Part shown: one piece after another, positions 3,305 through 41,038 of the stretch
Numbering within the stretch: position 1 is the stretch's first letter
Layout of the letters: every line of letters begins with the position of its first letter
IMG/VR virus record: IMGVR_UViG_3300009370_001221
Location: 1-64,000 of that record
Reading direction: 5' to 3' (one strand)
Length of the DNA: 64,000 bases
Translations under genes and position numbers: made by a program
Notes under the pieces: generated by a model
What the model was told of the DNA's origin: nothing
The model's database searches: none
The model's input: only the letters and a program-made list of their open reading frames with translations

Positions 3305-3761
3305 TGCCTACGTAATCGTCAAATAATCCATGTATAACATCTACAGCATTTTGAAAATCTTCAAATACCCAATTAACATTTGCCCTAATTAAAGGATGCT
3401 CTGTTAAGTACTCATCATCTGTTACTAATATAATAGGTTTCTTTAAACCAATTGCCCAACCAATCTCAATAGTTGTACCATAAGATGGCCGACGTTGGTT
3501 TAATTCACGTGGCATATATGCAAGAATTAAATCACACTTTTCTGTGTCATACCAATTCTTTGCCGCTATTGCTCCGGGGGAATTGTAACGTGGGTCGTTA
3601 CCTGGGCCGTATGTTTCTCCTTCCATAGGCTCACAACGTAGTGGGGAAATTCCAATTATGTTTGTGTGTAATTTATCACGAACATAACTGCGCCAGTCGT
3701 TTGCTTCCTGATAATTGCATTGCGCTATCGGGCCAGCAAGGTAAATATATTTTTTAGTCAT
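3297..3761 (-). CDS. Nucleoside 2-deoxyribosyltransferase family protein
   Basis: IYLAGPI, CDLILAY and SYGTTIEIGWA motifs. Confidence 0.85.
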   Translation of the reverse strand: MTKKYIYLAGPIAQCNYQEANDWRSYVRDKLHTNIIGISPLRCEPMEGETYGPGNDPRYNSPGAIAAKNWYDTEKCDLILAYMPRELNQRRPSYGTTIEIGWAIGLKKPIILVTDDEYLTEHPLIRANVNWVFEDFQNAVDVIHGLFDDYVGNG

Positions 3762-17323: not shown

Positions 17324-17905
17324 TTGCTACCTAAATTGAATAACTTTTTCATTGACCCTGATATTTGCTTTGACGTGAGCAAATTACAGGATGCATTGCG
17401 CGAAGTTGATTCGCGAGTCGCAAGACAATCTCCTTTAGGCAAAAGAGACATCAATGCTATTTGTCTGACACAAATTCCCGGTGATCCAAACTCTATCACA
17501 GGTGGTAATGTAAGAGGATTATTTTGGACACGCCCAACAAGCAGTGGTGAAGAGGTCCAACGAGAAAATCCAATAGACGAATCCCAATATACTGAGTTTG
17601 TTAAACTATTTGAAGATACTTACTTCAAAGAAGTATACGATACACTTATTCCCAATTATAAATTAGGCAGAGTAAGATTGCTTTGGAAAATGCCACGCAC
17701 AACATTGAGTTGGCACAGGGATCCTGAACGCAGATTACACATACCTATCGTAACCAACCCAGGCGCACTAATGATTATTGATGATGAAGTAAAACATATG
17801 CCCGCAGATGGCAAAGTATGGATTACTGATAATACAAAATATCATAATGCGTTTAACGGAGGCGAGGAAGATCGCGTCCATTTAGTTGCTACAGTTATAG
17901 AATAA
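17324..17905 (+). CDS. Asp/Asn beta-hydroxylase-like oxygenase
   Basis: WHRD, RLHIPIVTN and HNAFNGGEEDRVHLV. Confidence 0.8.
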   Translation: MLPKLNNFFIDPDICFDVSKLQDALREVDSRVARQSPLGKRDINAICLTQIPGDPNSITGGNVRGLFWTRPTSSGEEVQRENPIDESQYTEFVKLFEDTYFKEVYDTLIPNYKLGRVRLLWKMPRTTLSWHRDPERRLHIPIVTNPGALMIIDDEVKHMPADGKVWITDNTKYHNAFNGGEEDRVHLVATVIE

Positions 17906-17936
17906 GGAAAGGCCCTAAACGGGCCCTTCCAAAAAA
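17906..17936. terminator. GC hairpin between the convergent oxygenase and tmRNA units
   Basis: GGAAAGGCCC-TAAAC-GGGCCCTTCC followed by A6. Confidence 0.55.
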
Positions 17937-18114
17937 GCAGATTGGGTAACAAGGTATGCTCTATACCCCGGAATACTGCCGTGATTAAGCGGCTAATGCG
18001 TATTCGTAATAATCGTCGTTTGCAATTATTTTAGTTTGCTGTTTTTTAACATGGAACTGCTCCCATGTGTCGTCCGTATATCGTCCTCACCCTGTCGAAG
18101 CCATGTCACCCCCG

Positions 18115-18258
18115 TCAAAAAAAGATTAAGTATACTATACCACCAATAATAATTATGTCGGCACAGATACTCCATGCGACATATATTTTAAACATATATT
18201 CTATAGCTTTCCTGAAAGGCCTTGGTAATGTTTTTATCTTGTTCCGGAGGAATCGCAT
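18115..18258 (-). CDS. 47-aa basic/transmembrane peptide inside the tmRNA intervening segment
   Basis: AGGAGG-8nt-ATG; MRFLRNKIKTLPRPFRKAIEYMFKIYVAWSICADIIIIGGIVYLIFF*; stop codon ends 1 nt before tmRNA G1. Confidence 0.65.
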   Translation of the reverse strand: MRFLRNKIKTLPRPFRKAIEYMFKIYVAWSICADIIIIGGIVYLIFF

Positions 18259-18292
18259 CGTCGCTTCCTCCTATCAATGTATTATAGTTCAT
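18188..18292 (-). CDS. Possible 34-aa ORF in the tmRNA intervening segment
   Basis: AAGGAGA RBS right after CCA; MNYNTLIGGSDDAIPPEQDKNITKAFQESYRIYV*; overlaps the 47-aa ORF out of frame. Confidence 0.35.
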   Translation of the reverse strand: MNYNTLIGGSDDAIPPEQDKNITKAFQESYRIYV

Positions 18293-18372
18293 TTTAATCT
18301 CCTTTTGGTGGAGGTGGTGGGGATCGAACCCACGTCCAGAATGCATATTGTCTACATCATACGACAATAAAG

Positions 18373-18546
18373 TTACTTACTTATTTTCTTTTCTTCATAT
18401 AAAACATGTTTGCGTACAACTGGGTCATACTTTTTTAATTTAAGTTTATTGCCACCCATCTTTCTTTTATTAACGGTTGTGGTATAATAATGCCCGGTAC
18501 CAGCAGTTGATACTAATTTAATAATTGTAATATTTTTACTTGCCAT
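18373..18546 (-). CDS. rpmG: 50S ribosomal protein bL33 (zinc-independent form)
   Basis: Hand translation: [57 protein letters not shown], with IKLVSxAGTGHxYTT and [10 protein letters not shown] signatures; TAATG overlap with the upstream gene; absent from ORF track (57 aa). Confidence 0.95.
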
Positions 18547-18890
18547 TACCATGCATCCTTAAATTGTGGTTTAGCGAAATTATCATTTTCTATAACATGT
18601 TCTTTTACTTCTTCTTTATCACCATAAGATATATTTTGCGGTGGCACATCTACAGAACTTCCTGTAGTATAAAATCTTGATGCTGTTTGTACATCATCAA
18701 AACTTTGTGATTTTTGTCCCATTGCTTTATCGAAAATGTCTTTATAGTCATTATAAATTTCCATATAGCTAGAAGGACCATATTTTTTCTCGGCCTCATC
18801 TGTGACAAACTTAACATACTCTGATGCTAAAGTCAAATCACCACCTGCTAATTTAAGACATTCTAATCTTATATGTGTTGAATCAATCAT
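18546..18890 (-). CDS. Hypothetical protein
   Basis: [10 protein letters not shown]-terminal motif; translationally coupled on both sides. Confidence 0.6.
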
Positions 18891-19048
18891 TCTTCGCCTT
18901 TAAATAGTGTCCATGCACCATAAATTATTGCGCCCCAGGCCGCCCACTTAACCAGTGGTGAAAATAAGAGGCATACTACACCAACAGCGACTAATACGCC
19001 GCCATCCCATGATGATCTTTCTGCCCATCGTGCTTTTAAATAGTCCAT
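18887..19048 (-). CDS. 53-aa two-helix membrane protein
   Basis: AGGAGA RBS; [53 protein letters not shown]; ATGA overlap; not in ORF track. Confidence 0.7.
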   Translation of the reverse strand: MDYLKARWAERSSWDGGVLVAVGVVCLLFSPLVKWAAWGAIIYGAWTLFKGEE

Positions 19049-19083
19049 ATTGTTATTCTCCTATGGTTTATATTTATAAAATA

Positions 19084-19386
19084 TTAATTATCTGCTTCTA
19101 TTTTTACTTGTAACGGGTAATTATTGTTACGAGATAGTACAGTGGTTTCAATACCTTTTTGTTCTGCTATTTCATACGGCAATACTGCTACTATAGCAAA
19201 CCCTTCTTGATGTATTTTATGTGTCAAATCTTGTGCGGCATCAATGGCATGCATAAAAATAGACATTAAACAATTTACAACAAAATCCATTGGTGTAACA
19301 TCATCATTAATAAAAACTACCTTATACAAAGGTGGTTCTTTTAACTTTAAATTTTCTTCTATTTTAGTTGCAGTATCTGACATCAT
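19084..19386 (-). CDS. clpS: ATP-dependent Clp protease adaptor ClpS
   Basis: PPLYKVVFINDDVTPMDFVV...IHQEG...YEIAEQK...YPLQ. Confidence 0.95.
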   Translation of the reverse strand: MMSDTATKIEENLKLKEPPLYKVVFINDDVTPMDFVVNCLMSIFMHAIDAAQDLTHKIHQEGFAIVAVLPYEIAEQKGIETTVLSRNNNYPLQVKIEADN

Positions 19387-20033
19387 TGTTGCTCATAATT
19401 CTTTTTTGGCCCTTCCATTAAGTCACGTAAATTATATACTATAAATTTTCCTGGATTACGTTGCCCTGCTCGTCCTTTATGTTTAGCGGCTCTCTTCCAT
19501 TCTAAGACCATTGGATTACCTTGTTCTCGTGCTTCTTTTGCTTGCTTTAACTTTTTCTGCAATTTTTTAGTATACGGTAATTTATATAATCGAGTATCTG
19601 TTTTACCTAAATGTTTAACCCATAATTCAATAACTTTACCTTGTCTTTGGCCGTCCATTACAATTACTTTTCCAACAGGAATCGTAGGATAAGCATACCC
19701 TAGAACGTCATTTAACTTATCCATTGTACTATATAATAAGAAAAAAAGCAAGGGAATTGTTAAGAATTTGATGTAAAGTTTCGCAGGAGTACGTATTAAT
19801 ATATAACTAACAAGAATAATTAACAACACCGCAGTAATAAACTCAATATTAAACGCATATAGTATATCATACCAAGCATTCCATTCAAGTTTCTCATCAC
19901 CTGCTATTGTGGAAAAATCTATTGCTTTTTCTTGTGCTGTTGCCATAATATTTGCCTCTGCATTGTTTTGATGATGACTTGCGTCTGTAATGTTTTGAGT
20001 TTCTTGTTGTTCATCAATCATCAATATCCCCAT
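19383..20033 (-). CDS. Membrane protein, third gene of the MotA/ExbB-like cassette
   Basis: Two TM helices then GYAYP...IELWV...RLYKLPYTKKL; start uncertain. Confidence 0.55.
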   Translation of the reverse strand: MGILMIDEQQETQNITDASHHQNNAEANIMATAQEKAIDFSTIAGDEKLEWNAWYDILYAFNIEFITAVLLIILVSYILIRTPAKLYIKFLTIPLLFFLLYSTMDKLNDVLGYAYPTIPVGKVIVMDGQRQGKVIELWVKHLGKTDTRLYKLPYTKKLQKKLKQAKEAREQGNPMVLEWKRAAKHKGRAGQRNPGKFIVYNLRDLMEGPKKNYEQQ

Positions 20034-20845
20034 AAGTGTAAAAATTCTTCTTTAATACCAGCAAAATTGCCAGCAGGATCAGGGGGCACTGGTGACTCAG
20101 GTGTTTGGTCTCCATGTGTACGTTCAATTAAATTTCCGTCAGGGCCTTCATGATATGTTGATTGCCACCTTTGGTCATATACAAATGGTGTCATATATGT
20201 ATTAACATCTGTTATATGATAAATCTTTTCTTCAGTTAGTTCTCCACCTTTTCGTTTAGTATATGTTTCTTCTACTACAGTAAAATTAAACGCTGTTTTT
20301 TCTTGCCCTGGTTTAACCAAATCAAATTTAATTAAACCTTTAGATTTATATGGATTAATTCTAATTAATTCCACTGTGACAGGTGCAGTTATTTCTTCTT
20401 GTGGTACATCTGCAGTAGAGCCTTGCCTATACGCATAATAATGAATATTAACAGTCCATTCGCCTGGAAGGAAACCACGTATTGTAACAATCTCTTGATT
20501 CATATCACTTGTTACATAACGACCATCTGCTAATTGAACAGTGTCATTACTAGTACCTAGATCATCTCGATCCAAATGCATCAGTCCTCTATCCCTGCCT
20601 CTAAAACTAACAATTTGTCCTAATGGATCTCTAACCCACATGTCAATATCTTTAGACGATCCTTCAGGCCAAGTTAATATGAGCAATATCTCTGCCTTTG
20701 GATCTATTTTTTTATCTGTGGGGACAGGAGGTGCTATAAGCAAGAATGCTATAACAAAAAGGAACACAAAACCGATTAAAGTATTAAACAATAAATCAGT
20801 AAATCCTAATCCTGATAGATATCTGTTACGCTTTCCTGTGGTCAT
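20021..20845 (-). CDS. MotB/ExbD-like TM helix plus periplasmic beta domain protein
   Basis: FTDLLFN TM helix with a conserved Asp; LTWP...DIDMWVRDP...LDRDDLG...NIHYY. Confidence 0.6.
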   Translation of the reverse strand: MTTGKRNRYLSGLGFTDLLFNTLIGFVFLFVIAFLLIAPPVPTDKKIDPKAEILLILTWPEGSSKDIDMWVRDPLGQIVSFRGRDRGLMHLDRDDLGTSNDTVQLADGRYVTSDMNQEIVTIRGFLPGEWTVNIHYYAYRQGSTADVPQEEITAPVTVELIRINPYKSKGLIKFDLVKPGQEKTAFNFTVVEETYTKRKGGELTEEKIYHITDVNTYMTPFVYDQRWQSTYHEGPDGNLIERTHGDQTPESPVPPDPAGNFAGIKEEFLHLWGY

Positions 20846-21296
20846 ATTCTAAGTTCATCAATTGTAATTTGGTAATAATTGAGCACACAAGGCCTACCAA
20901 TGTAGTTGTTAACGCGGTACTCATTCCCGCGGCCATATCTCGTATAACTTCCTTGGCTTGTCCTATATTAGTTAAATCTAAGTCAGCAAAAGCGCCACCT
21001 AGCATTATGATAAAACCTGTTACTGTACCAATTAACCCCAAAGTTATCATTGATTCAGCAAAGAACCATGATACTTCTATTGTGCGGAAATTTAAAGGTC
21101 GGCTTTTATAGAGTTTGTATGATTGATGTCCTAAATGGGCAGTTAAACCATAAAACAGTATTAATATACCAAAGCTTATCTTGGTTTGGTCTAAATGCCA
21201 GAGGGTGACCCACATATCGAAATAATGTACTACTGCCGTTGAGGCAAGTACAGCACATGTTATTAGCCACCACTTGAGAAAGCAATTTGATCGCAT
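20826..21296 (-). CDS. MotA/TolQ/ExbB proton channel family protein
   Basis: LGLIGTVTGFI...GMSTALTTTLVGL. Confidence 0.88.
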   Translation of the reverse strand: MRSNCFLKWWLITCAVLASTAVVHYFDMWVTLWHLDQTKISFGILILFYGLTAHLGHQSYKLYKSRPLNFRTIEVSWFFAESMITLGLIGTVTGFIIMLGGAFADLDLTNIGQAKEVIRDMAAGMSTALTTTLVGLVCSIITKLQLMNLEYDHRKA

Positions 21297-21347
21297 TCGT
21301 CGCTCCTAATCCGTCTTCAGTATTTAGCGCAATCTATAAATATTGGA

Positions 21348-22427
21348 ATGAATCCAAATCATAAATTCTTCTGCATAGAACCATATGTTAGTATGTCAAT
21401 AACAGAACCTGGCAAGGTATTTTGTTGTTGTTTACATGAAGGAGGTAAAGTAACTACTCCTGACGATGTATGGAATGATCCTTACCTTAAAGATATTAGA
21501 GCAAAATTTGACCGGGGAGAAATACCAGAAGAATGTGAAGGTTGCGTCGAAAACGAAAAACATAGTGACGGACGCTCGAGTAGAAGACTAGACGTTAACA
21601 GAAATTGGTTAAAACTACATAATAATTATGAAGATTACATCGATTCTGATGCTCCATATAGATTTGATTTTTGGGTAGGTAATTTATGTAATTTAGCATG
21701 TAATACATGTACATCTTATTATAGTTCAACATGGAATACGTTACTACAAAGACCGGCTGGCCATGATAGAAATCACAGAAACAGCATTGATATAAAAGAA
21801 TGGAAACCTATTACTGAAGATCCTCCAAACATTGATTATAAAAATTTAGAATGGATACATTTTAATGGTGGAGAACCATTACTCACAGCTACTCATCTTA
21901 AAACTTTAGAAAAAATACCAAAAGAACAACGAAGTTCAGTACGAGTAGAATATAATACTAATGGTACAGTAAAAGTAGATACTAATAGTGAAAAATACAA
22001 AATCTTTAAAGAATTTAGATCAGTTACCATGACATACAGCATAGATGGCATAGATGATGTTTTTGAAGAAATTCGTTGGCCGGCAAAATGGAATAAAGTA
22101 AGAGATAATATAGATAATTGGGTTGATCAAGTATGTGCAACTAAAGTAAGTGACAATTGGTTTTTTATGATAGGATTCAATTTAACAAAATCAGCATATA
22201 ATTACGATTCAATTAATGAAACAATAGACTACATCAAAGAAAGATGGACTGAACCTGTAAAAAATTATCTCATTCCGGAATACAAAAATTGGAACTATTA
22301 TGATATGATATTCTTATGCAACGATCACAGATCTATGAATTTTACCGATAAAGATTTTGAAGAATTTACACAAACCAAAGAGTTCATACGTGAAAAAGAG
22401 TTAATTGATCGGTTAAGAAAACGATAA
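21348..22427 (+). CDS. Radical SAM protein with N-terminal SPASM/twitch-like domain
   Basis: CNLACNTC (CxxxCxxC), GGEPLL, YNTNGT and SIDG; extra N-terminal Cys cluster. Confidence 0.88.
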   Translation: MNPNHKFFCIEPYVSMSITEPGKVFCCCLHEGGKVTTPDDVWNDPYLKDIRAKFDRGEIPEECEGCVENEKHSDGRSSRRLDVNRNWLKLHNNYEDYIDSDAPYRFDFWVGNLCNLACNTCTSYYSSTWNTLLQRPAGHDRNHRNSIDIKEWKPITEDPPNIDYKNLEWIHFNGGEPLLTATHLKTLEKIPKEQRSSVRVEYNTNGTVKVDTNSEKYKIFKEFRSVTMTYSIDGIDDVFEEIRWPAKWNKVRDNIDNWVDQVCATKVSDNWFFMIGFNLTKSAYNYDSINETIDYIKERWTEPVKNYLIPEYKNWNYYDMIFLCNDHRSMNFTDKDFEEFTQTKEFIREKELIDRLRKR

Positions 22428-22432
22428 ATATA

Positions 22433-22461
22433 TTGACATATCATAGTAATGGTGCTATAAT
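22433..22461 (+). promoter_or_regulatory. Consensus sigma70 promoter of hsp20
   Basis: TTGACA-17nt-TATAAT; AAGGAGG RBS downstream. Confidence 0.75.
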
Positions 22462-22526
22462 ATGTATATGAGTGCTCAATTTGGAGGCTCATAAACTTAC
22501 TCGCTTAACATAAGGAGGAACTTAAA

Positions 22527-22958
22527 ATGACTGAGTATAGAATCACTGCGGGAAATCTTATCCCCACACTTAACCGACACATGGTCGGATTCGATCGCTT
22601 ATTTGGCGATATGGACAGGCTTTTTACACATCAAGCACCGTCCTACCCACCCTACAATATTGAACGCATCAGCGACTCTGAGTATGTAATTACCATTGCC
22701 GTTGCTGGGTTTTCTCAGGGTGATCTTTCAGTAACTGTTGATAATGGACAATTGACTGTCGCTGGTCACAAAGAGGACTCAGACGAACAGAATTGGCTAC
22801 ACAAGGGCATCGCAACACGCGACTTCAGACGCTCTTGGAACTTGGCAGAATATGTCGAAGTTGTATCGGCAGTATGCAAGGACGGAATGTTAAAGGTTAG
22901 TCTTAAACAGGAAGTACCTGAAGCACTGAAGCCAAAGGAGATCGAAATTAAGTTCTAA
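22527..22958 (+). CDS. ibpA: Small heat shock protein Hsp20 (IbpA-like)
   Basis: GFDRLF, SYPPYNI, AVAGF, HKGIATRDF and DGML. Confidence 0.95.
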   Translation: MTEYRITAGNLIPTLNRHMVGFDRLFGDMDRLFTHQAPSYPPYNIERISDSEYVITIAVAGFSQGDLSVTVDNGQLTVAGHKEDSDEQNWLHKGIATRDFRRSWNLAEYVEVVSAVCKDGMLKVSLKQEVPEALKPKEIEIKF

Positions 22959-22980
22959 GTTTCGCTAACCCAAAGAGGAG

Positions 22981-23005
22981 AGGGGGGCATTGTGCCCCCC
23001 TTTTT
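22981..23005 (+). terminator. Rho-independent terminator after hsp20
   Basis: AGGGGGGCA-TTG-TGCCCCCCT followed by a T run. Confidence 0.85.
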
Positions 23006-23020
23006 CTTCACACGGCAGGG

Positions 23021-23341
23021 TTAATATTTTCGTTTACGATGGATGGAATTTTCAGCAACTTCTTTTAAATGTCGCTTACGGGCAATGTCTTTAGCACGTT
23101 TTCTTGCAATACTAGGTTTTTCATATTGTTCACGAGCTTTTAAATCTTGTAATTTACCGGAATTGGCTACTTTCTTTTTAAATTTGCGTAAGGCTTTATC
23201 CACATCACCATTTTGCACCCAAACTTTAAGTCCAGATATTTTTACTGGACTAACTTTATAATCTATTGGTTTTCTATAAGGTTTCTTTCCACCTCTATTT
23301 TTATCCCAACTTGTATTTTTATTATTCCAATCCCGTGCCAT
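23021..23341 (-). CDS. rpsU: 30S ribosomal protein bS21 with N-terminal extension
   Basis: VQNGDVDKALRKFKKKV...REQYEKPSIARKR. Confidence 0.92.
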   Translation of the reverse strand: MARDWNNKNTSWDKNRGGKKPYRKPIDYKVSPVKISGLKVWVQNGDVDKALRKFKKKVANSGKLQDLKAREQYEKPSIARKRAKDIARKRHLKEVAENSIHRKRKY

Positions 23342-23733
23342 TATTCCTCCAATTGTTTTATAGGCTCTATAATACTTTCTATTCTATTTGTGTTAAATAA
23401 TCCTACTAGTTTAGCAGTTTTATCATCACACTTATAATAACAATTACTCTTACTTAATAACCAACCAAAGCATATTGCATCTCTCTCTACTTTTGCCCAT
23501 TTAAGATTAAATATTATTATACTACATCTTAGAGCTGTGTCAAGCATCCATTCTGTATCTCTCTCGGGAGTCATATCATTTATTGCTAAACAGCACTCTG
23601 CATCTATATTATCAAGTACTAATATTAATTCACTTTGTTCGTCTTTACTAAAACCTGATATTAATATGTTTACATCAGCACCATAATATCTATCTGGTGG
23701 TGTTATTATTGTTAATTTATCCGCCGAGGACAT
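23341..23733 (-). CDS. Hypothetical protein
   Basis: IITPPD N-terminal motif; coupled to neighbours. Confidence 0.6.
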   Translation of the reverse strand: MSSADKLTIITPPDRYYGADVNILISGFSKDEQSELILVLDNIDAECCLAINDMTPERDTEWMLDTALRCSIIIFNLKWAKVERDAICFGWLLSKSNCYYKCDDKTAKLVGLFNTNRIESIIEPIKQLEE

Positions 23734-25723
23734 CTTGTCTGCTTAAATAATTTTGTAAGAACTCTTGTTCCTCATCTGTAAACTCTTCTATGTTTACACC
23801 ACTATTTAAGCGAGTAAGTAAATTATCTACCTGTTCCTGATTAAAATTAGCAGTATTTTCAGCACCAGTTAGTTTAGTTTTTAATTGTGCTATTTCTTTT
23901 TCTAACTTTTTAACTTTTTTCTTATCCTCTTTTAATACTACTATGGGAGTGCCTTCTAATTGCTCTGTTTCTACTACAGTTTTTTCTACTATTTTTTCAA
24001 CTTCTACCGGAACTTCCTTAATTACTTCTACTTCCTTAATTACTTCTACAGGAACTTCCTTCTCTACTATTTTCTCAACTTCTACAATTTTTTCTACAAT
24101 CTTTTCAACAGGAACTTCTACCTCTTTAATAACTTCTTTAATAACTTCTACTGGCACTTCTTTTTCTACAATTTTTTCAACAATTTTCTCTACTTCTACT
24201 TCTTTAATTACTTCTACTGGAACTTCCTTCTCTACTATTTTCTCAACAATAACTTCTTTCTCAACAGGAACTTTTACTTCTTTAATGATTTCTTTAATTA
24301 CTTCTACAGGAACTTCTTTTTCAACAACTACTTCCTTTTCAACAACAACTTCCTCTATTCTCACTGTTTCTTCCTGGTTAGAATCCTGCTTCGGCCCAGC
24401 GTGGATCGGTCTTTTTTTTTCGGAAGGATCTCTAAAACGTTTTAATGTCATATTACCAGCAACAACTAATAATACTGCAAGTGGATCAAATACAAATATA
24501 ATTGTAATAATTACCCAACGTACTGCTTCTTCTAATAAATCACGTGTAACATTAGATCCGTATACTAAACCAGCAATGTATTTAATAGGCCCTACTTCTA
24601 CTTCTAACTGGCGTACTTCTGTAGCAAGTACAAAACGTTGCTCTTTAAGTGTATCTATCTGTGTATAGTAATCTTCTATTACTACTTCTAATTCATTTAC
24701 TTTTGTTTCTACTTCATCTGCTTTCATACCCATTTGTTCTTGAAGTTGTTTAATTTCAGCATTAGCTTCATCAATTTCTGATTGGGTATTTTCACGCAAT
24801 TGTGCTATTTTATTTTGATGTGGTCGAATAGCAACTGCTAATGCTTCGCGCAATGCAGTAATTTCTGTTTGCACTTCATTTGAGATGGCAAGTTCATCCT
24901 GCCTTATACCATCTATCTCTTGCTCAATCTCTCTAATTTTAAATGCCAAGGCCTCTCGCTCGGGTTTTTGTTTTTCACGCAATTCTTTACCACGCTTAAT
25001 CCAATCAATCGGTTGTCCCCATGTCCGCTTCTCTACGCCTTTATCTACATATGCTTGAACTTCTTTATCTAATTGTGCTAATTGTTGATTTATACGGTCT
25101 ATTGCTTGTTGTTTAACAGCAACATCATCACGCACACGATCTATAGCATTAGACACTCGTTGTTCTTGTATAGCAATATCTTTTTCTAATTGCGCTCTTA
25201 ATGCTGTTATTTGTTGATTCTCTTGGCTAATACTACTGCTGACTCTACCCCAAGCACCATCACGTATTTCTTCTTGTTGTTCAATAGCTGAGGCAATATT
25301 TGTATTATGCTGACCGTGATCTTTACTTTGCAACCGCTCTATTTTCTCTTTAGTAACATTTACTCGCCCAGTAAATCGATTAATCTTTTCATTAATACGC
25401 TCTACTTTTGCTTCTGCTTGTGTTGTATTACTTGTTTGCTCTACGTGTGCTTTGGATAAAAAGCCAAAGATACCCATAGACGTAATGAACATTAAGACAA
25501 CAACTGCTATAGTAAGATAATACTTTAGAAATTTTGGTATGCGAGCCCAAAACTGGTAGAGCCACGAGGCAGTTACTAACTTACCTATCTCTAATACTAC
25601 ACCCATAATTGCTATAGGCACAGCGGCCGCGGCAAATATTGCCATTAAGCCAATAATACTATAATATGCGGCAACGGCGCTGATCGACAGCGCCGTCAAC
25701 AGAACAAATATTCCAAACTTCAT
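23717..25723 (-). CDS. Membrane-anchored long coiled-coil protein with C-terminal V/E/K/I/P repeats
   Basis: N-terminal TM helices, long heptad region, GPIKYIA...VFDPLAV TM, repeated EKIVEKEVPVEVIKE. Confidence 0.75.
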   Translation of the reverse strand: MKFGIFVLLTALSISAVAAYYSIIGLMAIFAAAAVPIAIMGVVLEIGKLVTASWLYQFWARIPKFLKYYLTIAVVVLMFITSMGIFGFLSKAHVEQTSNTTQAEAKVERINEKINRFTGRVNVTKEKIERLQSKDHGQHNTNIASAIEQQEEIRDGAWGRVSSSISQENQQITALRAQLEKDIAIQEQRVSNAIDRVRDDVAVKQQAIDRINQQLAQLDKEVQAYVDKGVEKRTWGQPIDWIKRGKELREKQKPEREALAFKIREIEQEIDGIRQDELAISNEVQTEITALREALAVAIRPHQNKIAQLRENTQSEIDEANAEIKQLQEQMGMKADEVETKVNELEVVIEDYYTQIDTLKEQRFVLATEVRQLEVEVGPIKYIAGLVYGSNVTRDLLEEAVRWVIITIIFVFDPLAVLLVVAGNMTLKRFRDPSEKKRPIHAGPKQDSNQEETVRIEEVVVEKEVVVEKEVPVEVIKEIIKEVKVPVEKEVIVEKIVEKEVPVEVIKEVEVEKIVEKIVEKEVPVEVIKEVIKEVEVPVEKIVEKIVEVEKIVEKEVPVEVIKEVEVIKEVPVEVEKIVEKTVVETEQLEGTPIVVLKEDKKKVKKLEKEIAQLKTKLTGAENTANFNQEQVDNLLTRLNSGVNIEEFTDEEQEFLQNYLSRQDVLGG
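23965..24360 (-). repeat. Coding tandem repeats (EKIVEKEVPVEVIKEV-like)
   Basis: Multiple imperfect copies visible in DNA and protein. Confidence 0.85.
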
Positions 25724-25758
25724 AATACATATTTATGCTATTTCCAAGCATAAATAAT

Positions 25759-25845
25759 TGGCTCCGGGGGTTGGGATCGAACCAACATTGCCCATTGGGC
25801 ACCCTATAAACGGTAGGGCCTGTATACCTATTCCAGCACCCCGGA
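25759..25845 (-). tRNA. Atypical tRNA, anticodon GUU (Asn), long variable arm, encoded CCA
   Basis: TCCGGGG/CCCCGGA acceptor, G73, CCA; D arm CTG-GAATAGGTATA-CAG; anticodon arm CCCTA-CCGTTTA-TAGGG; variable arm TGCCC-AAT-GGGCA; T arm GTTGG-TTCGATC-CCAAC; 87 nt. Confidence 0.9.
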
Positions 25846-25852
25846 TCATTTT

Positions 25853-26710
25853 TTATCGGTGCATATTTGCTACTATACCACGCAACTTATATTGTTCCAT
25901 CGCATGAATAAAACGTGTCATGCCTATTCCACCACCTACTCTTGGAATAAAATCTAATTGTAAAAAGTCATCTAGTTCTTTTGTTACACGATCTTTACCA
26001 AATGTTCCAAACAATAAATCTGCATACATACCATCACTAATTGTATGAAACATTTCTCGCATTTCAGTAGTGTCACTACTGCGCTCTGCTGAACCAATAG
26101 TTTCCATGCCCGCTATAATTACATCAATTTTTGCGGCCGTTCCGTCACCATTTTGTTTCATGTTCCAAAAAGGACTTGTGTAATTAGGGAAGTTTTTAAT
26201 CATGCAAACTCTACCTTGCCAATTCTTACACATTGCGTCTTCGTGCTCATGCTCGAGTTCTTGAACACCAAAATCCTCGCACCATGCAAGATAATCCTTT
26301 GCAACAACTCCACCCTTAGAACACCAACCTAAGTATTCCATAAGTTCTTTTTCCATTTTTTCTAAATCATTCATGTCACCTGGCATTTCAAATTCAAACA
26401 TTGGGAAAATTAAATCATGTCTACCTTCTACAACATTAGGTTCTTGCCTATAGGATGTTGAAACACAAAAAAACCCCGGGACATGGGGTTTAGTTAAAAG
26501 CTCGTACTCGAGCCACATTTGGCCAGTTTGTGGAAGTGGCCAAACTTCTCCGGCATAGTTATATGTTGCTACAGTTGTTGGATCTTCACACGCGGCTAAT
26601 ATTGATAATCTATTTTGAGTATGTACCTCTTCAAATCCTTTAGCCATAAAAAAAGACCTTAATAGGCCTGTGGCTTCAGTAAACTGTTGAGGGTTAATTA
26701 ATTGCGTCAT
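25853..26710 (-). CDS. Class IIb aminoacyl-tRNA synthetase catalytic-core protein (AsnRS/AspRS-like, no anticodon-binding domain)
   Basis: Motif 1-like LRSFFMAKGFEEVHT, LPQTGQMWLE, motif 2 SYRQEP...RHDLIFPMFEFE, ETIGSAER, motif 3 GGGIGMTR; 285 aa from the GGAG-preceded ATG at 26710. Confidence 0.85.
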   Translation of the reverse strand: MTQLINPQQFTEATGLLRSFFMAKGFEEVHTQNRLSILAACEDPTTVATYNYAGEVWPLPQTGQMWLEYELLTKPHVPGFFCVSTSYRQEPNVVEGRHDLIFPMFEFEMPGDMNDLEKMEKELMEYLGWCSKGGVVAKDYLAWCEDFGVQELEHEHEDAMCKNWQGRVCMIKNFPNYTSPFWNMKQNGDGTAAKIDVIIAGMETIGSAERSSDTTEMREMFHTISDGMYADLLFGTFGKDRVTKELDDFLQLDFIPRVGGGIGMTRFIHAMEQYKLRGIVANMHR

Positions 26711-26839
26711 TCTTATTCTCCAGTCAAATTTTTTTAGGCGCAAGACAAGCCGCCTAAACTGTTTTTATTTATACCTTTTCTTTATTATAGTACAATTAAG
26801 TCAAGTTATTATTATATCAGAAACCACTTTAAATATTAT

Positions 26840-36311: not shown

Positions 36312-36326
36312 ATCTATATTTATACT

Positions 36327-37607
36327 TTAACTGTAATTACAATTACTACAGGTTGAAGCACAAATATGTAAATTTCCATTTTTACTATTATATGGTGCAT
36401 TTACTGTTTGGAGAAATATATTTTCTGATGTATCTGGTTTCCAAGTTTGTTTGACAAGATTCATAAATCCACTATCAAATACTGCTTTAATACTTCCATG
36501 CTTTAATGCATCATTTACATCTTGTTGTAAGCCTGCGTATTTTAAAAGTTCTCGAGTATCATATGTATATTCATTTGCTATTCTTGTATGGTTCAATCCC
36601 ATCATGCAACATGGATATACATAACCATCTGCTGTAATAAAAATTCGTTGTAAATCAACTGCCATACAATCTATTTTACGATTCTCAATAAAACGAGCTT
36701 CTCCTCCACCACGTAAAATATTATTAATATCTACATTATCAAAATTATTAGTAATATTGGCATATCCACCTAAATAACCTTCAAGCCAAGATTTCTCTGT
36801 AATATCTTTCTCCCAAGACTTTTCTTGATTTAAATATTTTTTACTGACAATTTTACCAAATTCTATTGTTTGTTTCATATCAACAGTATGCCCATCAAGT
36901 GCATCTACATTAGTATTTTCTTTTAAATTTGTTGTAGCATTCATATAACCATATTCATCTATAGTTGAGTCTTCCAATTGTCCAACATATACTCCTTTGT
37001 TATCCATAACAGGAGTACCATTAGGACGATCTGATTTAATAACATCAATATTATTAAAATTATATGCTTTAGCTAATCTTTTTACTTCTTCTAATTGATG
37101 TTGATTATGCTTAAACAATATAAATTGCCAACATGCATTTCCTCCAGCATCAATAAATGCTGTTGCATTACTTAATACTTTAAGATAACTTGTATTACGC
37201 CTATAAAACGAATGCACTTCTTCTGTAGTGCCATCAATTGCCCATATTATTTTCATCCCTTTACCATACTTTGCAAACTCTGCCCAATAATGTTGCTCAT
37301 ACATTGAACCATTAGTATTGAGGGTTGCCCAAATCTCTGGATTAACACTAAACAAATATTCTACCATATCGTGCAAATAAGGATTCATTTGGGCATCACC
37401 CAGATTACCACAAAAACTTATATCGTTTAATTGTTGCAAAAATTCTTCGGGCAATAGTATTTTAAACTGCTCAAGTGTCATATTGCCTTTATATATACCG
37501 GGTTTTGCCCCATAACCAAAATAATTTCGCGGACAGGCAGGACAAGCGGCATTGCACCGCTCTGTTATTTCTATTTGAACACTTTTAATATCGTTGAGAT
37601 TATACAT
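36327..37607 (-). CDS. Radical SAM/SPASM-domain protein
   Basis: CNAACPAC, FCGNLGD, NTNGS, IDG and GYVYPCC; start reassigned to MYNL. Confidence 0.88.
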   Translation of the reverse strand: MYNLNDIKSVQIEITERCNAACPACPRNYFGYGAKPGIYKGNMTLEQFKILLPEEFLQQLNDISFCGNLGDAQMNPYLHDMVEYLFSVNPEIWATLNTNGSMYEQHYWAEFAKYGKGMKIIWAIDGTTEEVHSFYRRNTSYLKVLSNATAFIDAGGNACWQFILFKHNQHQLEEVKRLAKAYNFNNIDVIKSDRPNGTPVMDNKGVYVGQLEDSTIDEYGYMNATTNLKENTNVDALDGHTVDMKQTIEFGKIVSKKYLNQEKSWEKDITEKSWLEGYLGGYANITNNFDNVDINNILRGGGEARFIENRKIDCMAVDLQRIFITADGYVYPCCMMGLNHTRIANEYTYDTRELLKYAGLQQDVNDALKHGSIKAVFDSGFMNLVKQTWKPDTSENIFLQTVNAPYNSKNGNLHICASTCSNCNYS

Positions 37608-38280
37608 TATAATACTGGGCGACTTTATCATTCCAACCTTCAGCCACGGTGTCAAACTCCTCACCTTCAATAACAAATTCTTGATATGTTAAATCACGAC
37701 TGCACATTAGTATAACTCCAGTATTTATTTCTGTATCAAACATCTCATTATGAGCCTGAGCATAAGCAGTAAGTTGGCAAAAGTAATCATCAACCCATTC
37801 TCTTTTCTTTGGTTTATTTGTTTGCTTAAAATCTAAAATTGCTAACTTACCATTCCATAAACCAACACAATCTGTTGTGCCGGCATATAAACCACTGGCA
37901 TACAACGAAACTTCTGTGCCATATATCTCTGCTACTTGCCTAAAACCTTCCGCTATAATAACATTAGACATACTATATGCTTGCTGATGTATTTGATTAC
38001 TGCCTACTTTTCTCTTTTCACTGTTAATGTATAATTCTAAATTTTTATGCATTAACGTGCCAACATTAGCAGCTTCTGTAGTAATTTGCTGTGCTTGCTC
38101 TGTGCCAACACGCTTTCTCCAATTTGCTAATGCTTCTCTTTTTTCTTTTGATTTTGTTGCATCTAGTATAGTTGTAACACTAGGAACACTTGAGCCATCA
38201 GGTAACTTATAATGGCGTTTTCTGTCTATTGTTGTTACTCTGTCAATAGGAGAGTATTCGTATTTCTCTAATAATAGCAT
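37600..38280 (-). CDS. PD-(D/E)XK exonuclease (phage Cas4-like family)
   Basis: PSVTTIL, GTLMH, YAGTTDC, ILDFKQ and QLTAYA. Confidence 0.88.
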   Translation of the reverse strand: MLLLEKYEYSPIDRVTTIDRKRHYKLPDGSSVPSVTTILDATKSKEKREALANWRKRVGTEQAQQITTEAANVGTLMHKNLELYINSEKRKVGSNQIHQQAYSMSNVIIAEGFRQVAEIYGTEVSLYASGLYAGTTDCVGLWNGKLAILDFKQTNKPKKREWVDDYFCQLTAYAQAHNEMFDTEINTGVILMCSRDLTYQEFVIEGEEFDTVAEGWNDKVAQYYNV

Positions 38281-38286
38281 TGTTAT

Positions 38287-38315
38287 ATTATAGTTGATTT
38301 ATATTTAAATGTCAA
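38287..38315 (-). promoter_or_regulatory. Consensus sigma70 promoter, predicted leaderless transcript
   Basis: TTGACA-17nt-TATAAT-6nt-ATG(38280). Confidence 0.8.
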
Positions 38316-41017: not shown

Positions 41018-41038
41018 ACTATTATTTATATGGGATTA

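What the first reader, a model, noticed from the sequence alone, without database searches (positions are those of the whole stretch)
17930..26710. A 9-kb translation-takeover and proteostasis neighbourhood
Seen: tmRNA, bL33, ClpS, Hsp20, bS21, an atypical tRNA and an aaRS-like enzyme cluster together. Established: ClpS redirects ClpAP to N-degron substrates and inhibits its degradation of ssrA-tagged proteins. Inference: coordinated remodelling of both ribosomal subunits, rescue and protease specificity, possibly serving the leaderless mRNAs noted separately.
Basis: inference. Interest (0 to 1): 0.6.

Follow-up and report, generated by a model that had tools for sequence, protein, structure and literature searches.

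The report
Phage Clp-chaperone cassette with translation add-ons
A marine jumbo phage carries a conserved chaperone and protease-adaptor gene cassette with a ribosomal protein inside it, and its lineage has added a two-piece tmRNA, a second ribosomal protein, and a truncated asparaginyl-tRNA-synthetase-like enzyme paired with its own odd tRNA.

Summary
All seven listed elements are at the stated coordinates in a 235-kb marine jumbo-phage contig. They are not one unit. The conserved core is bS21-Hsp20-ClpS. Hsp20 sits directly upstream of ClpS in 51 of 51 non-redundant viral loci. bS21 is upstream in 27 of 37, a virus-only membrane coiled-coil protein in 36 of 37, a true ClpX in 21 of 26, and ClpP downstream in 19 of 26. 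Cultured Pseudomonas phage PA5oct has ClpX-bS21-(2 genes)-Hsp20-ClpS.

The tmRNA, bL33 and the aaRS-like/tRNA pair are lineage-specific. They cluster with the core within 9.6-14.1 kb in four divergent marine relatives. In three other relatives (two of them complete) the tmRNA lies 155-224 kb from ClpS, and bL33 and the enzyme are absent. The enzyme+tRNA pair also occurs alone in T4-like cyanophages.

In the window the region holds several transcription units with two promoter types, so a single co-regulated programme is not supported. Nor is a link to leaderless mRNAs.

The most novel part is the enzyme, an AsnRS-like core without an anticodon-binding domain. A strongly covarying tRNA(GUU) follows it 5-11 nt downstream in most viral loci examined.

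The parts
17906..18366 (-). Two-piece (permuted) tmRNA gene. Acceptor piece 18366..18306 ends in CCA. A 192-nt linker runs 18305..18114. The coding piece starts at 18113. The terminator hairpin is at 17930..17906.
   Evidence: Rfam RF04321 119.7 bits over model positions 1-213; RF01850 99.6 bits. G3:U70 and the CCA end were read from the sequence. Terminator.
17985..18023 (-). tmRNA tag reading frame, ANDDYYEYALAA followed by a stop
   Evidence: Translation; alignment to the Rfam consensus.
18188..18292 (-). 34-aa ORF with an AAGGAG Shine-Dalgarno sequence, inside the tmRNA linker insertion. Its status is unknown.
   Evidence: Sequence. Relative L098 has a linker of only about 10 nt. The insertion is present in contigs from other marine samples.
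18373..18552 (-). Ribosomal protein bL33 without cysteines. Its stop codon lies 6 nt before the tmRNA.
   Evidence: PF00471 and TIGR01023 above their cut-offs.
18546..19048 (-). Two small hypothetical genes (114 aa and 53 aa) between ClpS and bL33. A TATAAATA motif at 19078..19071 precedes them.
   Evidence: Conserved only in close relatives.
19084..19386 (-). ClpS adaptor
   Evidence: PF02617 85.3 bits. NDDxTPM and His pocket motif and the E-x-x-E-x-K helix are conserved. Docking on the ClpA N-domain is predicted.
19383..21296 (-). MotA/ExbB-like channel protein (20826-21296) plus two membrane proteins of 274 and 216 aa. The genes overlap end to end and run into ClpS. In this lineage the module is inserted between Hsp20 and ClpS.
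   Evidence: PF01618 28.6 bits. The trio occurs elsewhere in relative L106.
21348..22427 (+). Twitch-domain radical SAM protein, with a TATAAATA motif 5 nt upstream of its start
   Evidence: NF033640 204.5 bits against a cut-off of 170.
22433..22461 (+). Perfect sigma-70 consensus promoter for Hsp20
   Evidence: 4 perfect sites in the window against 0.17 expected.
22527..22958 (+). Small heat-shock protein (Hsp20, IbpA-like), with a strong Shine-Dalgarno sequence
   Evidence: PF00011 64.7 bits; Shine-Dalgarno sequence. A contig from an RNA-labelled run covers 22488-22902 (weak evidence).
22981..23001 (.). Bidirectional terminator between the convergent Hsp20 and bS21 genes
23021..23341 (-). 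Ribosomal protein bS21 with a 38-aa N-terminal extension. A perfect sigma-70 promoter lies at 23543..23516.
   Evidence: PF01165 57.5 bits and TIGR00030 60.1 bits; promoter.
23341..25723 (-). 130-aa hypothetical protein and a 668-aa membrane coiled-coil protein with VEKEV-type repeats. The family is virus-only and sits upstream of bS21 in most relatives.
25759..25845 (-). Atypical tRNA(GUU): U1-A72, G73, encoded CCA, C33, U37, long variable arm
   Evidence: Covariation across 50 homologues.
25853..26710 (-). AsnRS/AspRS-like class IIb catalytic core without an anticodon-binding domain. A TATAAATA motif lies upstream at 26773..26766.
   Evidence: (phrog_29758).

Best explanation
The region is a composite accessory island of a marine jumbo myovirus distantly related to Pseudomonas phage PA5oct.

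Its old, conserved core is a proteostasis cassette with a ribosomal protein embedded in it: a membrane coiled-coil protein, (ClpX), bS21, Hsp20 and ClpS, often with ClpP a few kb downstream. In this phage the core has been rearranged. ClpX is missing, Hsp20 is inverted and has its own consensus sigma-70 promoter, and a MotA-like module plus a radical SAM gene are inserted.

The marine sub-lineage has placed two further translation modules next to the core: bL33 with a two-piece tmRNA, and an AsnRS-like enzyme with a dedicated tRNA(GUU).

Inferred mechanism:
- Host RNA polymerase expresses Hsp20 and bS21 from consensus promoters.
- bS21 and bL33, which are exchangeable ribosomal proteins, enter host ribosomes.
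- Host AlaRS charges the tmRNA through G3:U70. With host SmpB, the tmRNA rescues stalled ribosomes and adds an ...YALAA degron.
- ClpS docks on host ClpA. This turns ClpAP away from ssrA-tagged proteins towards N-degron or aggregated substrates and leaves tagged proteins to ClpXP, which many relatives encode.
- Hsp20 holds unfolded proteins.
- The enzyme/tRNA pair raises the supply of Asn-tRNA(Asn).

Shown: presence, conservation, motif integrity and gene order. Inferred: every functional step and any coordination beyond the core cassette.
For: - Element identities.
- Core cassette. In 80 ClpS-seeded viral loci Hsp20 is directly upstream on the same strand in 80 of 80. After collapsing to 51 ClpS clusters at 90% identity it is 51 of 51, with a median gap of about 41 nt. 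The coiled-coil protein is present in 36 of 37 and bS21 in 27 of 37.
- A true ClpX (zinc finger plus AAA_2) lies directly upstream of bS21 in 21 of 26 loci. A true ClpP (264.8 bits) lies downstream in 19 of 26.
- PA5oct has ClpX-bS21-hyp-hyp-Hsp20-ClpS. Its DnaB is 50% identical to this phage's.
- Marine relatives G002-G005 keep tmRNA, the aaRS-like gene, the coiled-coil protein, bS21 (not detected in G004), Hsp20 and ClpS within 9.6-14.1 kb in different orders.
- Close relative L098 has the same order and the tag ANDDYYDYALAA.
- ClpS pocket and ClpA-contact residues are conserved.
- Predicted ClpS/ClpA-N complex: score 0.86, best of 3 controls 0.01. That mark was reached by 51 of 78 solved complexes and 2 of 108 mismatched pairs. 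The runs agree in at least 93% of contacts and the partner pLDDT is at least 87.
- Consensus promoters before Hsp20 and bS21. PA5oct depends on host RNA polymerase and uses TTGAC/TATAATA promoters (PMC7318152).
- Gene junctions from MotA to bL33 overlap or are short, the tmRNA starts 6 nt after bL33, and a terminator follows it.
- No SmpB and no ClpX/ClpA were found in the 235 kb held, so host partners are needed.
Against: - tmRNA, bL33 and the enzyme are absent from, or far from, the cassette in G007-G009 and in PA5oct.
- The flanks of the cassette are also fairly conserved in the clade: downstream families occur in 18-19 of 26 loci. Part of the synteny is therefore simple common descent.
- There are two promoter types and both strands are used.
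- Unrelated genes are interspersed.
- The only expression data are contigs from a run merely labelled RNA.
- The complex prediction may be recalled from solved ClpS-ClpA structures.
- The record is 67% complete and the host is unknown.
Confidence: 0.6

Rival explanations
1. The region is a plastic accessory-gene island. Host-derived genes accumulate wherever the phage genome tolerates insertions. The shared theme comes from which host genes are small and useful on their own, and the conserved order is inherited rather than selected. The products do not cooperate.
For: - Mixed strands, separate promoters and terminators.
- Interspersed radical SAM, MotA-like, hydroxylase and thioredoxin genes.
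- Independent distribution of the tmRNA, bL33 and the enzyme pair.
- Conserved flanking families in the clade.
Against: - Hsp20-ClpS adjacency is invariant in 51 of 51 lineages, down to about 35-40% protein identity, and holds in PA5oct.
- ClpX, ClpS, ClpP and the sHsp belong to one biochemical system.
- The tmRNA and the enzyme stay near the cassette in several rearranged marine lineages.
Confidence: 0.3
2. The whole 9 kb is a single co-regulated takeover programme that remodels both ribosomal subunits, ribosome rescue and protease specificity together, and serves leaderless mRNAs.
For: - Thematic coherence.
- A probable long operon MotA...ClpS...bL33-tmRNA.
- Leaderless-type promoter spacing exists elsewhere in the genome.
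Against: - At least four transcription units and two promoter classes.
- Hsp20 and bS21 mRNAs have leaders with strong Shine-Dalgarno sequences.
- The members separate in relatives.
Confidence: 0.08
3. The aaRS-like enzyme does not charge tRNA. It is an archaeal-type asparagine synthetase A (AS-AR) that makes free Asn from Asp, ATP and ammonia. The adjacent tRNA(GUU) is an ordinary supplementary tRNA-Asn handled by host enzymes: AsnRS, or non-discriminating AspRS plus GatCAB.
For: - Same length and domain architecture as AS-AR. PDB 3reu aligns at Z 24.1 over 247 of 289 residues.
- Cellular homologues (57-63% identity) have no adjacent tRNA.
- Some phage lineages keep the enzyme without the tRNA.
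- The invariant tRNA positions (G34 U35 U36, G73, U1-A72) are, from my own knowledge of the field, the identity set for AsnRS/AspRS and for GatCAB.
Against: - The best sequence and structure matches are AsnRS.
- The NCBIfam AS-A model scores 23.6 bits against a cut-off of 389.
- The tight spacing of 5-11 nt to the tRNA in about 85% of the viral loci examined argues for a tRNA-linked role.
- The five cellular genomes checked have GatB but no full-length third class IIb synthetase. With no AsnRS there, free Asn would have no obvious use in translation.
Confidence: 0.35
4. The tmRNA is not functional. It is a leftover attachment-site fragment, since ssrA genes are common phage integration sites.
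For: General knowledge only.
Against: - The full permuted model is matched, positions 1-213.
- Both pieces are present, with an intact G3:U70, a CCA end, a tag frame with a stop codon, and a terminator.
- Homologous complete tmRNAs occur in at least 8 related phage records.
Confidence: 0.02

Closest known systems
Pseudomonas jumbo phage PA5oct, genes gp255-gp260 (ClpX, bS21, two hypotheticals, heat-shock protein, ClpS)
   Same: Same core order bS21...Hsp20-ClpS on one strand. Related replication genes: DnaB is 50% identical. PA5oct depends on host RNA polymerase and uses sigma-70-type promoters.
   Different: PA5oct has ClpX directly upstream of bS21, and FtsH nearby. It has no tmRNA, bL33 or AsnRS-like enzyme. 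In the window ClpX is absent, Hsp20 is inverted, and four genes separate it from ClpS.
Published context survey of phage bS21 genes (Chen et al. 2022, PMC9723584) and surveys of phage ribosomal proteins and jumbo-phage genes (Mizuno et al. 2019, PMC6375957; Iyer et al. 2021, PMC7824862)
   Same: Within 10 genes of bS21 in 900 phages, Hsp20 was counted 127 times and two Clp families 50 and 47 times. bS21 and bL33 are enriched in aquatic viruses. ClpS and Hsp20 have been noted in jumbo phages.
   Different: Those papers report counts. None of the passages I read describes an invariant Hsp20-ClpS pair, a ClpX-bS21-Hsp20-ClpS cassette, or its linkage with a tmRNA, bL33 or an aaRS/tRNA pair.
Bacterial ssrA/SmpB trans-translation with ClpXP/ClpAP and the ClpS adaptor (E. 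coli)
   Same: ALAA-ending tag, G3:U70 alanine identity, ClpS pocket and ClpA-contact residues.
   Different: The tmRNA is of the permuted two-piece type and carries a 192-nt linker insertion. No SmpB, ClpA or ClpX was found in the 235 kb held. In bacteria clpS is paired with clpA, not with an sHsp gene (my own knowledge, not tested here).
AsnRS and archaeal asparagine synthetase A (AS-AR, PDB 3P8T/3REU)
   Same: Class IIb catalytic fold, Z 24-27. Motif 2 and motif 3 arginines are invariant. The 'QxxLE' segment aligns with the AsnRS 'QLYLE' segment. Like AS-AR, it has no anticodon-binding domain.
   Different: About 20% identity to either, and far below the NCBIfam cut-offs for both. Unlike any described AS-AR or AsnRS, it is paired in phages with a dedicated atypical tRNA.
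'tRNA ligase' (T4-GC 194) plus tRNA-Asn of cyanophages P-SSM2, P-SSM5 and P-SSM7
   Same: The same enzyme family at about 61% identity, with the same tRNA 8-10 nt downstream in P-SSM2 and P-SSM7.
   Different: There the pair sits among T4-like structural and replication genes, without a tmRNA, bL33, ClpS or bS21 nearby. The literature lists it only as a sporadic host-like gene (PMC3037559).

Membership tests
Two-piece (permuted) tmRNA | Full-length match to the covariance model above the gathering score, with the acceptor piece upstream of the coding piece | tested here: met
   RF04321 119.7 bits against 47, model positions 1-213.
Two-piece (permuted) tmRNA | Acceptor stem with G3:U70 and a 3' CCA; tag frame starting at an Ala codon and ending in a stop codon, with an ALAA degron | tested here: met
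   Read from the sequence; translation gives ANDDYYEYALAA*.
Two-piece (permuted) tmRNA | Processing into two RNAs, alanylation, SmpB binding, tagging activity | not testable with these tools
   No SmpB gene in the 235 kb held. Only assembled contigs were available for read mapping.
ClpS adaptor | ClpS domain above the Pfam cut-off; N-degron pocket (NDDxTPM and His) and ClpA-contact helix (E-x-x-E-x-K) | tested here: met
   PF02617 85.3 bits against 23. The motifs are invariant in the phage alignment. The residue roles come from my own knowledge of E. coli ClpS.
ClpS adaptor | Equivalog-level match to bacterial ClpS (NCBIfam) | tested here: not met
   Best score 81.5 bits against a cut-off of 149. 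It is a divergent member.
ClpS adaptor | Binds the ClpA N-domain | tested here: inconclusive
   In silico only: score 0.86, best control 0.01. The mark was reached by 51 of 78 solved complexes and 2 of 108 mismatched pairs. A similar complex has been solved, so the pass may reflect memory, and the host ClpA is unknown.
Ribosomal proteins bS21 and bL33 | Match above the curated cut-offs | tested here: met
   bS21: TIGR00030 60.1 bits against 28.95. bL33: TIGR01023 69.9 bits against 23.95.
Ribosomal proteins bS21 and bL33 | Incorporation into host ribosomes | not testable with these tools
   Requires ribosome purification from infected cells.
Small heat-shock protein (Hsp20/IbpA) | Alpha-crystallin domain above the cut-off; C-terminal I-x-I motif | tested here: met
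   PF00011 64.7 bits against 20.8. The protein ends ...EIEIKF. IbpA equivalog 112.7 bits against 212 is not reached.
Asparaginyl-tRNA synthetase (class IIb) | Catalytic core with motif 2 and motif 3 arginines | tested here: met
   R99, E101 and the G270-R277 block are invariant in 30 sequences. Fold Z 26.7 to AsnRS.
Asparaginyl-tRNA synthetase (class IIb) | N-terminal OB-fold anticodon-binding domain | tested here: not met
   The protein is 285 aa. The model aligns only to the catalytic domains of the 420-590-aa synthetases.
Asparaginyl-tRNA synthetase (class IIb) | Equivalog score; aminoacylation of tRNA-Asn | tested here: not met
   asnS TIGR00457 28.6 bits against 342.6. Activity is not testable here.
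Archaeal-type asparagine synthetase A (AS-AR) | Stand-alone class IIb core of about 290 aa | tested here: met
   3reu Z 24.1, 247 of 289 residues aligned.
Archaeal-type asparagine synthetase A (AS-AR) | Family-level sequence match; ammonia-dependent Asn synthesis | tested here: not met
   NF005055 23.6 bits against 389. Activity is not testable here.
Elongator tRNA | Cloverleaf supported by covariation | tested here: met
   99.9% of cells paired; 17 of 20 pairs have changes on both sides; 0 of 500 shuffles reach this.
Elongator tRNA | Canonical anticodon loop (U33, purine 37) and a general tRNA model score | tested here: not met
   The window copy has C33 and U37 and no RF00005 match. Across 50 homologues position 33 is U in 34, and position 37 is U in 43. 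More distant homologues score 46-53 bits on RF00005.
Single operon / one regulon | One strand, one promoter class, no internal terminators | tested here: not met

The most novel reading that the evidence does not exclude
The truncated AsnRS-like enzyme and its co-transcribed tRNA(GUU) form a self-contained aminoacylation pair that needs no anticodon-binding domain, i.e. a minimal AsnRS that reads the acceptor end (invariant U1-A72 and G73). It would give phages a direct route to Asn-tRNA(Asn) that bypasses GatCAB. The stand-alone homologues could do the same for CPR and other reduced bacteria that lack a full-length AsnRS. A bolder variant is that the enzyme amidates Asp on the tRNA.
Probability: 0.35. 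Interest if true: 0.8.

Novelty: new variant of a known kind. Interest (0 to 1): 0.62.

Why it matters
Each piece is already known from phages: ribosomal proteins, tmRNA, ClpS and sHsp. This analysis adds three things.

- It separates an invariant core, (ClpX)-bS21-Hsp20-ClpS, which is conserved from a cultured Pseudomonas phage to 500-kb aquatic phages, from lineage-specific additions.
- Because PA5oct is culturable, the role of a phage ribosomal protein embedded in a Clp/chaperone cassette can be tested directly.
- It identifies a very abundant marine protein family (at least 8000 clusters at 90% identity). This AsnRS-like core without an anticodon domain is paired in phages with a dedicated, strongly covarying but non-canonical tRNA. 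It also occurs in reduced bacteria that lack a full-length AsnRS.

If the enzyme charges tRNA, it would be a natural minimal synthetase/tRNA pair and a previously unrecognised route to Asn-tRNA.

Tried and rejected
- Megablast of the 8.9 kb against 50,697 phage records gave no match.
- ARAGORN's tag VATKW... and its second tmRNA at 18306-18845 are rejected as artefacts.
- The 668-aa coiled-coil protein was tested as a homologue of PA5oct gp255 (ClpX). It is not one, BLASTP E 3.7. It has no Pfam or PHROG family, and the protein atlas gives only viral hypothetical clusters.
- The closest relative, G001 (322 kb), cannot be judged for ClpS, bL33 or the tmRNA, because its contig ends directly after the 216-aa gene.
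- In the 235 kb held I looked for ClpX/ClpA, SmpB and ClpP. Only weak AAA matches came up, SmpB was absent, and one ClpP-family ORF lies near 215.9 kb.
- Expression: no run on record as RNA holds the region. Two runs with RNA-type library labels gave a few contigs, the deepest on Hsp20. Contigs cannot show transcript ends or levels.
- The PA5oct paper holds no supplementary tables as text, so the temporal class of gp255-260 could not be read.
- Fold comparison does not separate AsnRS, AspRS, AS-AR and GenX: Z 22.8-26.7.
- The host was not identified. The window's tmRNA scores best with the betaproteobacterial two-piece model, and distant relatives score best with the alphaproteobacterial model. 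This is a hint only.

Full report
**What the window is.** The window is the first 64 kb of a single 235,363-bp contig. Its GC content is about 35%. It encodes phage replication genes. IMG/VR classes it as a linear virus record, and CheckV rates it 67% complete. The same sequence occurs in marine and seawater metagenomes from 12 named studies. Its DnaB is 50% identical to that of Pseudomonas jumbo phage PA5oct, and less similar to the DnaB of Atu_ph07, Phosso and the Rak2-like phages. Megablast against the phage collection found nothing.

**Observation check.**
- tmRNA: on the minus strand and of the permuted two-piece type. Rfam tmRNA_permuted scores 119.7 bits over 17985-18366, and beta_tmRNA scores 99.6 bits over 17903-18417.
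- tmRNA anatomy: the acceptor piece ends in CCA at 18306. The coding piece starts at 18113 with GGGGGUGA. The acceptor stem has G3:U70.
- Tag: the frame 18023..17985 reads ANDDYYEYALAA and then a stop. A terminator hairpin follows at 17930-17906.
- ARAGORN artefacts: ARAGORN's tag and its second tmRNA call are artefacts.
- Proteins: bL33, ClpS, Hsp20 and bS21 all pass the Pfam cut-offs. bL33 and bS21 also pass the NCBIfam cut-offs.
- tRNA: it is 87 nt, has anticodon GUU and a long variable arm, and gets no Rfam tRNA match.
- Enzyme: a class II D/K/N-type catalytic core without an anticodon-binding domain. Its 283-285-aa relatives indicate a start at the ATG at 26710.

**Synteny: the core.** I sampled viral contigs seeded on ClpS, independently of the other genes.
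- Hsp20 lies directly upstream of ClpS on the same strand in all 80 loci. bS21 is upstream in 64, and a homologue of the 668-aa protein in 63.
- After collapsing to 51 ClpS clusters at 90% identity, Hsp20 is adjacent in 51 of 51, with a median gap of about 41 nt. Among loci with enough upstream sequence, the coiled-coil protein is present in 36 of 37 and bS21 in 27 of 37.
- In 21 of 26 loci with 8 kb on both sides, the gene directly upstream of bS21 is a true ClpX (ClpX zinc finger plus AAA_2). In 19 of 26 a true ClpP (264.8 bits) lies about 3 kb downstream of ClpS. An SprT-like peptidase is present in 10 of 26.
- PA5oct has ClpX, bS21, two hypotheticals, a heat-shock protein and ClpS in a row, with FtsH further on.
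- Other flanking families are also fairly conserved, in 18-19 of 26 loci. Part of the synteny is therefore inherited collinearity, although the cassette is the most constant part.
- In the window and its close relatives (L097-L100, L149; ClpS 73% identical) the cassette is rearranged. Hsp20 is inverted, and the radical SAM gene plus the MotA trio sit between Hsp20 and ClpS. No ClpX was found.

**Synteny: the periphery.**
- Close relative L098 has the window's order, with bL33 63 nt before a tmRNA whose tag is ANDDYYDYALAA.
- Four divergent marine fragments were examined: G002 to G005. Their enzyme is 64-66% identical to the window's, and in the three with aligned ClpS it is about 40% identical. 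All four keep the permuted tmRNA, the enzyme, the coiled-coil protein, Hsp20 and ClpS within 9.6, 10.4, 9.9 and 14.1 kb. bS21 was detected in three of them. The orders differ. In several, the tmRNA is divergently adjacent to the enzyme gene. G004 has a weak bL33 match next to its tmRNA.
- In G007 (524 kb) and G008 (352 kb), both complete, and in G009, the tmRNA lies 155-224 kb from ClpS. bL33 and the enzyme are absent. PA5oct has none of the three.
- The enzyme with its tRNA also occurs alone in the T4-like cyanophages P-SSM2 and P-SSM7.
It is not met for the core, nor for the marine sub-lineage.

**Transcription signals.** All of these are motif-based inferences.
- Four perfect TTGACA-N16-18-TATAAT sites occur in the window, against 0.17 expected. 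One lies 66 nt before Hsp20 and one 175 nt before bS21.
- Both genes have strong Shine-Dalgarno sequences. They converge on a bidirectional terminator at 22981-23001.
- PA5oct depends on host RNA polymerase and uses TTGAC/TATAATA promoters.
- TATAAATA, the T4 late-promoter motif, is depleted in the genome: 17 sites against about 46 expected. Fifteen of the 17 lie 5-60 nt upstream of a gene start.
- Four of the 17 are in or directly flanking this region. They precede the hydroxylase gene, the hyp53-hyp114-bL33-tmRNA unit, the radical SAM gene and the enzyme-tRNA unit. CATAAATA precedes the coiled-coil gene.
- Gene junctions from MotA to bL33 overlap or are short, which suggests one long unit ending at the tmRNA terminator.
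- The region therefore looks like several units of two promoter classes.
- The only expression hint is a 415-nt contig on Hsp20 (22488-22902) at 19x in a run labelled RNA-Seq. Other contigs from that run reach 2-3x. I give this little weight.

**ClpS and the tmRNA.**
- The phage ClpS family keeps the NDDxTPM and His pocket and the E-x-x-E-x-K helix. The roles of these residues come from my own knowledge of E. coli ClpS.
- A predicted complex with the E. coli ClpA N-domain scored 0.86, against 0.01 for the best of 3 controls. The mark was reached by 51 of 78 solved complexes and 2 of 108 mismatched pairs. The runs agree in at least 93% of contacts and the partner pLDDT is at least 87. The interface includes ClpS residues 69-76 and 79.
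- A similar complex has been solved, so this pass shows likeness rather than binding in the real host.
- No SmpB, ClpA or ClpX was found in the 235 kb held.
- It is established that ClpS blocks ClpAP degradation of ssrA-tagged proteins and redirects ClpAP to N-degron and aggregated substrates. Combined with the ALAA tag and the ClpX/ClpP genes of relatives, this makes a coherent reading. That reading remains an inference.

**The enzyme and its tRNA.**
- The enzyme family is large: at least 598 viral stretches and at least 8000 clusters at 90% identity.
- An AlphaFold model from 30 sequences has a mean pLDDT of 85.7. It matches the catalytic domains of AsnRS (Z 26.7), AspRS (25.9), archaeal asparagine synthetase A (24.1, over nearly its whole length) and GenX (22.8).
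- A profile search of PDB sequences puts AsnRS first. It aligns the invariant Q-x-x-L-E segment with the AsnRS QLYLE segment. The motif 2 and motif 3 arginines are invariant.
- In the best 80 viral loci the gene is followed 5-11 nt downstream by a tRNA in about 85% of distinct cases. That gives 55 distinct tRNA sequences.
- On 50 of them the cloverleaf is paired in 99.9% of cells. Seventeen of the 20 pairs show changes on both sides, and no shuffle or slid control comes near.
- Invariant positions are U1-A72, G73, G34 and U35. U36 is present in 49 of 50, and CCA is encoded in 46.
- Position 33 is U in only 34 of 50, and position 37 is U in 43 of 50. The variable region ranges from 6 to 38 nt.
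- More distant homologues score 46-53 bits on the general tRNA model. The window's sub-group does not reach the threshold.
- Some lineages keep the enzyme without the tRNA.
- Cellular homologues (57-63% identical; 384 stretches) are mostly in Patescibacteria. Others are in Dependentiae, Rickettsiales and Bacteroidota MAGs. None of these has an adjacent tRNA(GUU).
- Five such genomes have at most two full-length class IIb synthetases plus the truncated one, and all five have GatB. They appear to lack a full-length AsnRS.
- Two readings remain open: a minimal AsnRS, or an AS-AR-like asparagine synthetase. The invariant tRNA positions are those any tRNA-Asn needs for AsnRS/AspRS and for GatCAB (my own knowledge), so they do not decide between the two.

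**Comparison with the literature.**
- Phage bS21 and bL33 in aquatic viruses are known (PMC6375957).
- ClpS and Hsp20 in jumbo phages are known (PMC7824862).
- Hsp20 and Clp families were counted near bS21 in 900 phages (PMC9723584).
- The cyanophage 'tRNA ligase' is listed as a sporadic gene (PMC3037559).
- My searches found no description of the invariant cassette, of its linkage with a tmRNA and bL33, or of the enzyme-tRNA pair. The library is partial, so this is not proof of novelty.

**Verdict.**
- The region is best described as a conserved Clp/chaperone cassette with an embedded bS21. In one marine lineage, rescue (tmRNA with bL33) and Asn-decoding (enzyme with tRNA) modules have gathered around it.
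- Coordination is plausible within the core and unproven beyond it.
- The leaderless-mRNA link is unsupported for these genes, although leaderless-type promoter spacing does occur elsewhere in the genome.

Noticed in passing
window 18114-18305 (-), ORF 18292..18188: The linker between the two tmRNA pieces is 192 nt here, against about 10 nt in close relative L098. It contains a 34-aa ORF preceded by an AAGGAG Shine-Dalgarno sequence. The insertion is present in contigs from other marine samples.
   Followed up: partly
window 38287-38315 (-), 21335-21342 (+), 36317-36324 (-), 41023-41030 (-); genome C1 155370, 127008, 225185: Several perfect sigma-70 promoters end 7-8 nt before a start codon, and several TATAAATA motifs end 5 nt before one. 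The genes of this finding are not among them, except the radical SAM gene.
   Followed up: partly
whole genome C1: TATAAATA is depleted (17 sites against about 46 expected), yet 15 of the 17 lie 5-60 nt upstream of a same-strand gene start. This suggests a T4-type late promoter.
   Followed up: partly
window 19383-21296 (-): A MotA/ExbB-like protein (with a weak ZorA-like match) plus 274-aa and 216-aa membrane proteins form a three-gene module. The module also occurs 8 kb downstream of ClpS in relative L106. Its function is unknown.
   Followed up: no
window 23717-25723 (-), C-terminal third: The virus-only membrane coiled-coil protein carries a long run of VEKEV/PVEVIKEV-type repeats. Its N-terminal 440 residues are the conserved part.
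   Followed up: no
L187-L191, L204 (genome contigs): Several contigs filed in MAGs look like mis-binned phage contigs. The MAGs are Pacearchaeota, Thaumarchaeota, Legionellales, Flavobacteriaceae and Chloroflexota. Two have the same lengths as IMG/VR viral contigs (13,588 and 27,770 bp), and two carry the phage-type tRNA(GUU).
   Followed up: partly
L210, L202, L255, L242, L230 (Patescibacteria and Dependentiae genomes): Genomes with a stand-alone copy of the truncated AsnRS-like gene have GatB and at most two full-length class IIb synthetases, so they appear to lack a full-length AsnRS.
   Followed up: partly
L098 about 3410-3500: In the close relative, a GC-rich hairpin occupies the place of the tRNA after the enzyme gene. 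The tRNA has been lost while the enzyme is retained.
   Followed up: partly
L062 13151-13200 (-): A glutamine riboswitch (glnA RNA, 55.5 bits) is present in a related marine phage contig.
   Followed up: no
genome C1 about 215.85-216.5 kb (-): A ClpP-family ORF (212 aa, 107 bits) lies far from the cassette. It could be a true ClpP or a prohead protease.
   Followed up: no
window 21348-22427 (+) and 36327-37676 (-); L048: Radical SAM genes recur in this phage group, with three twitch-type copies in L048. Their substrates are unknown.
   Followed up: no
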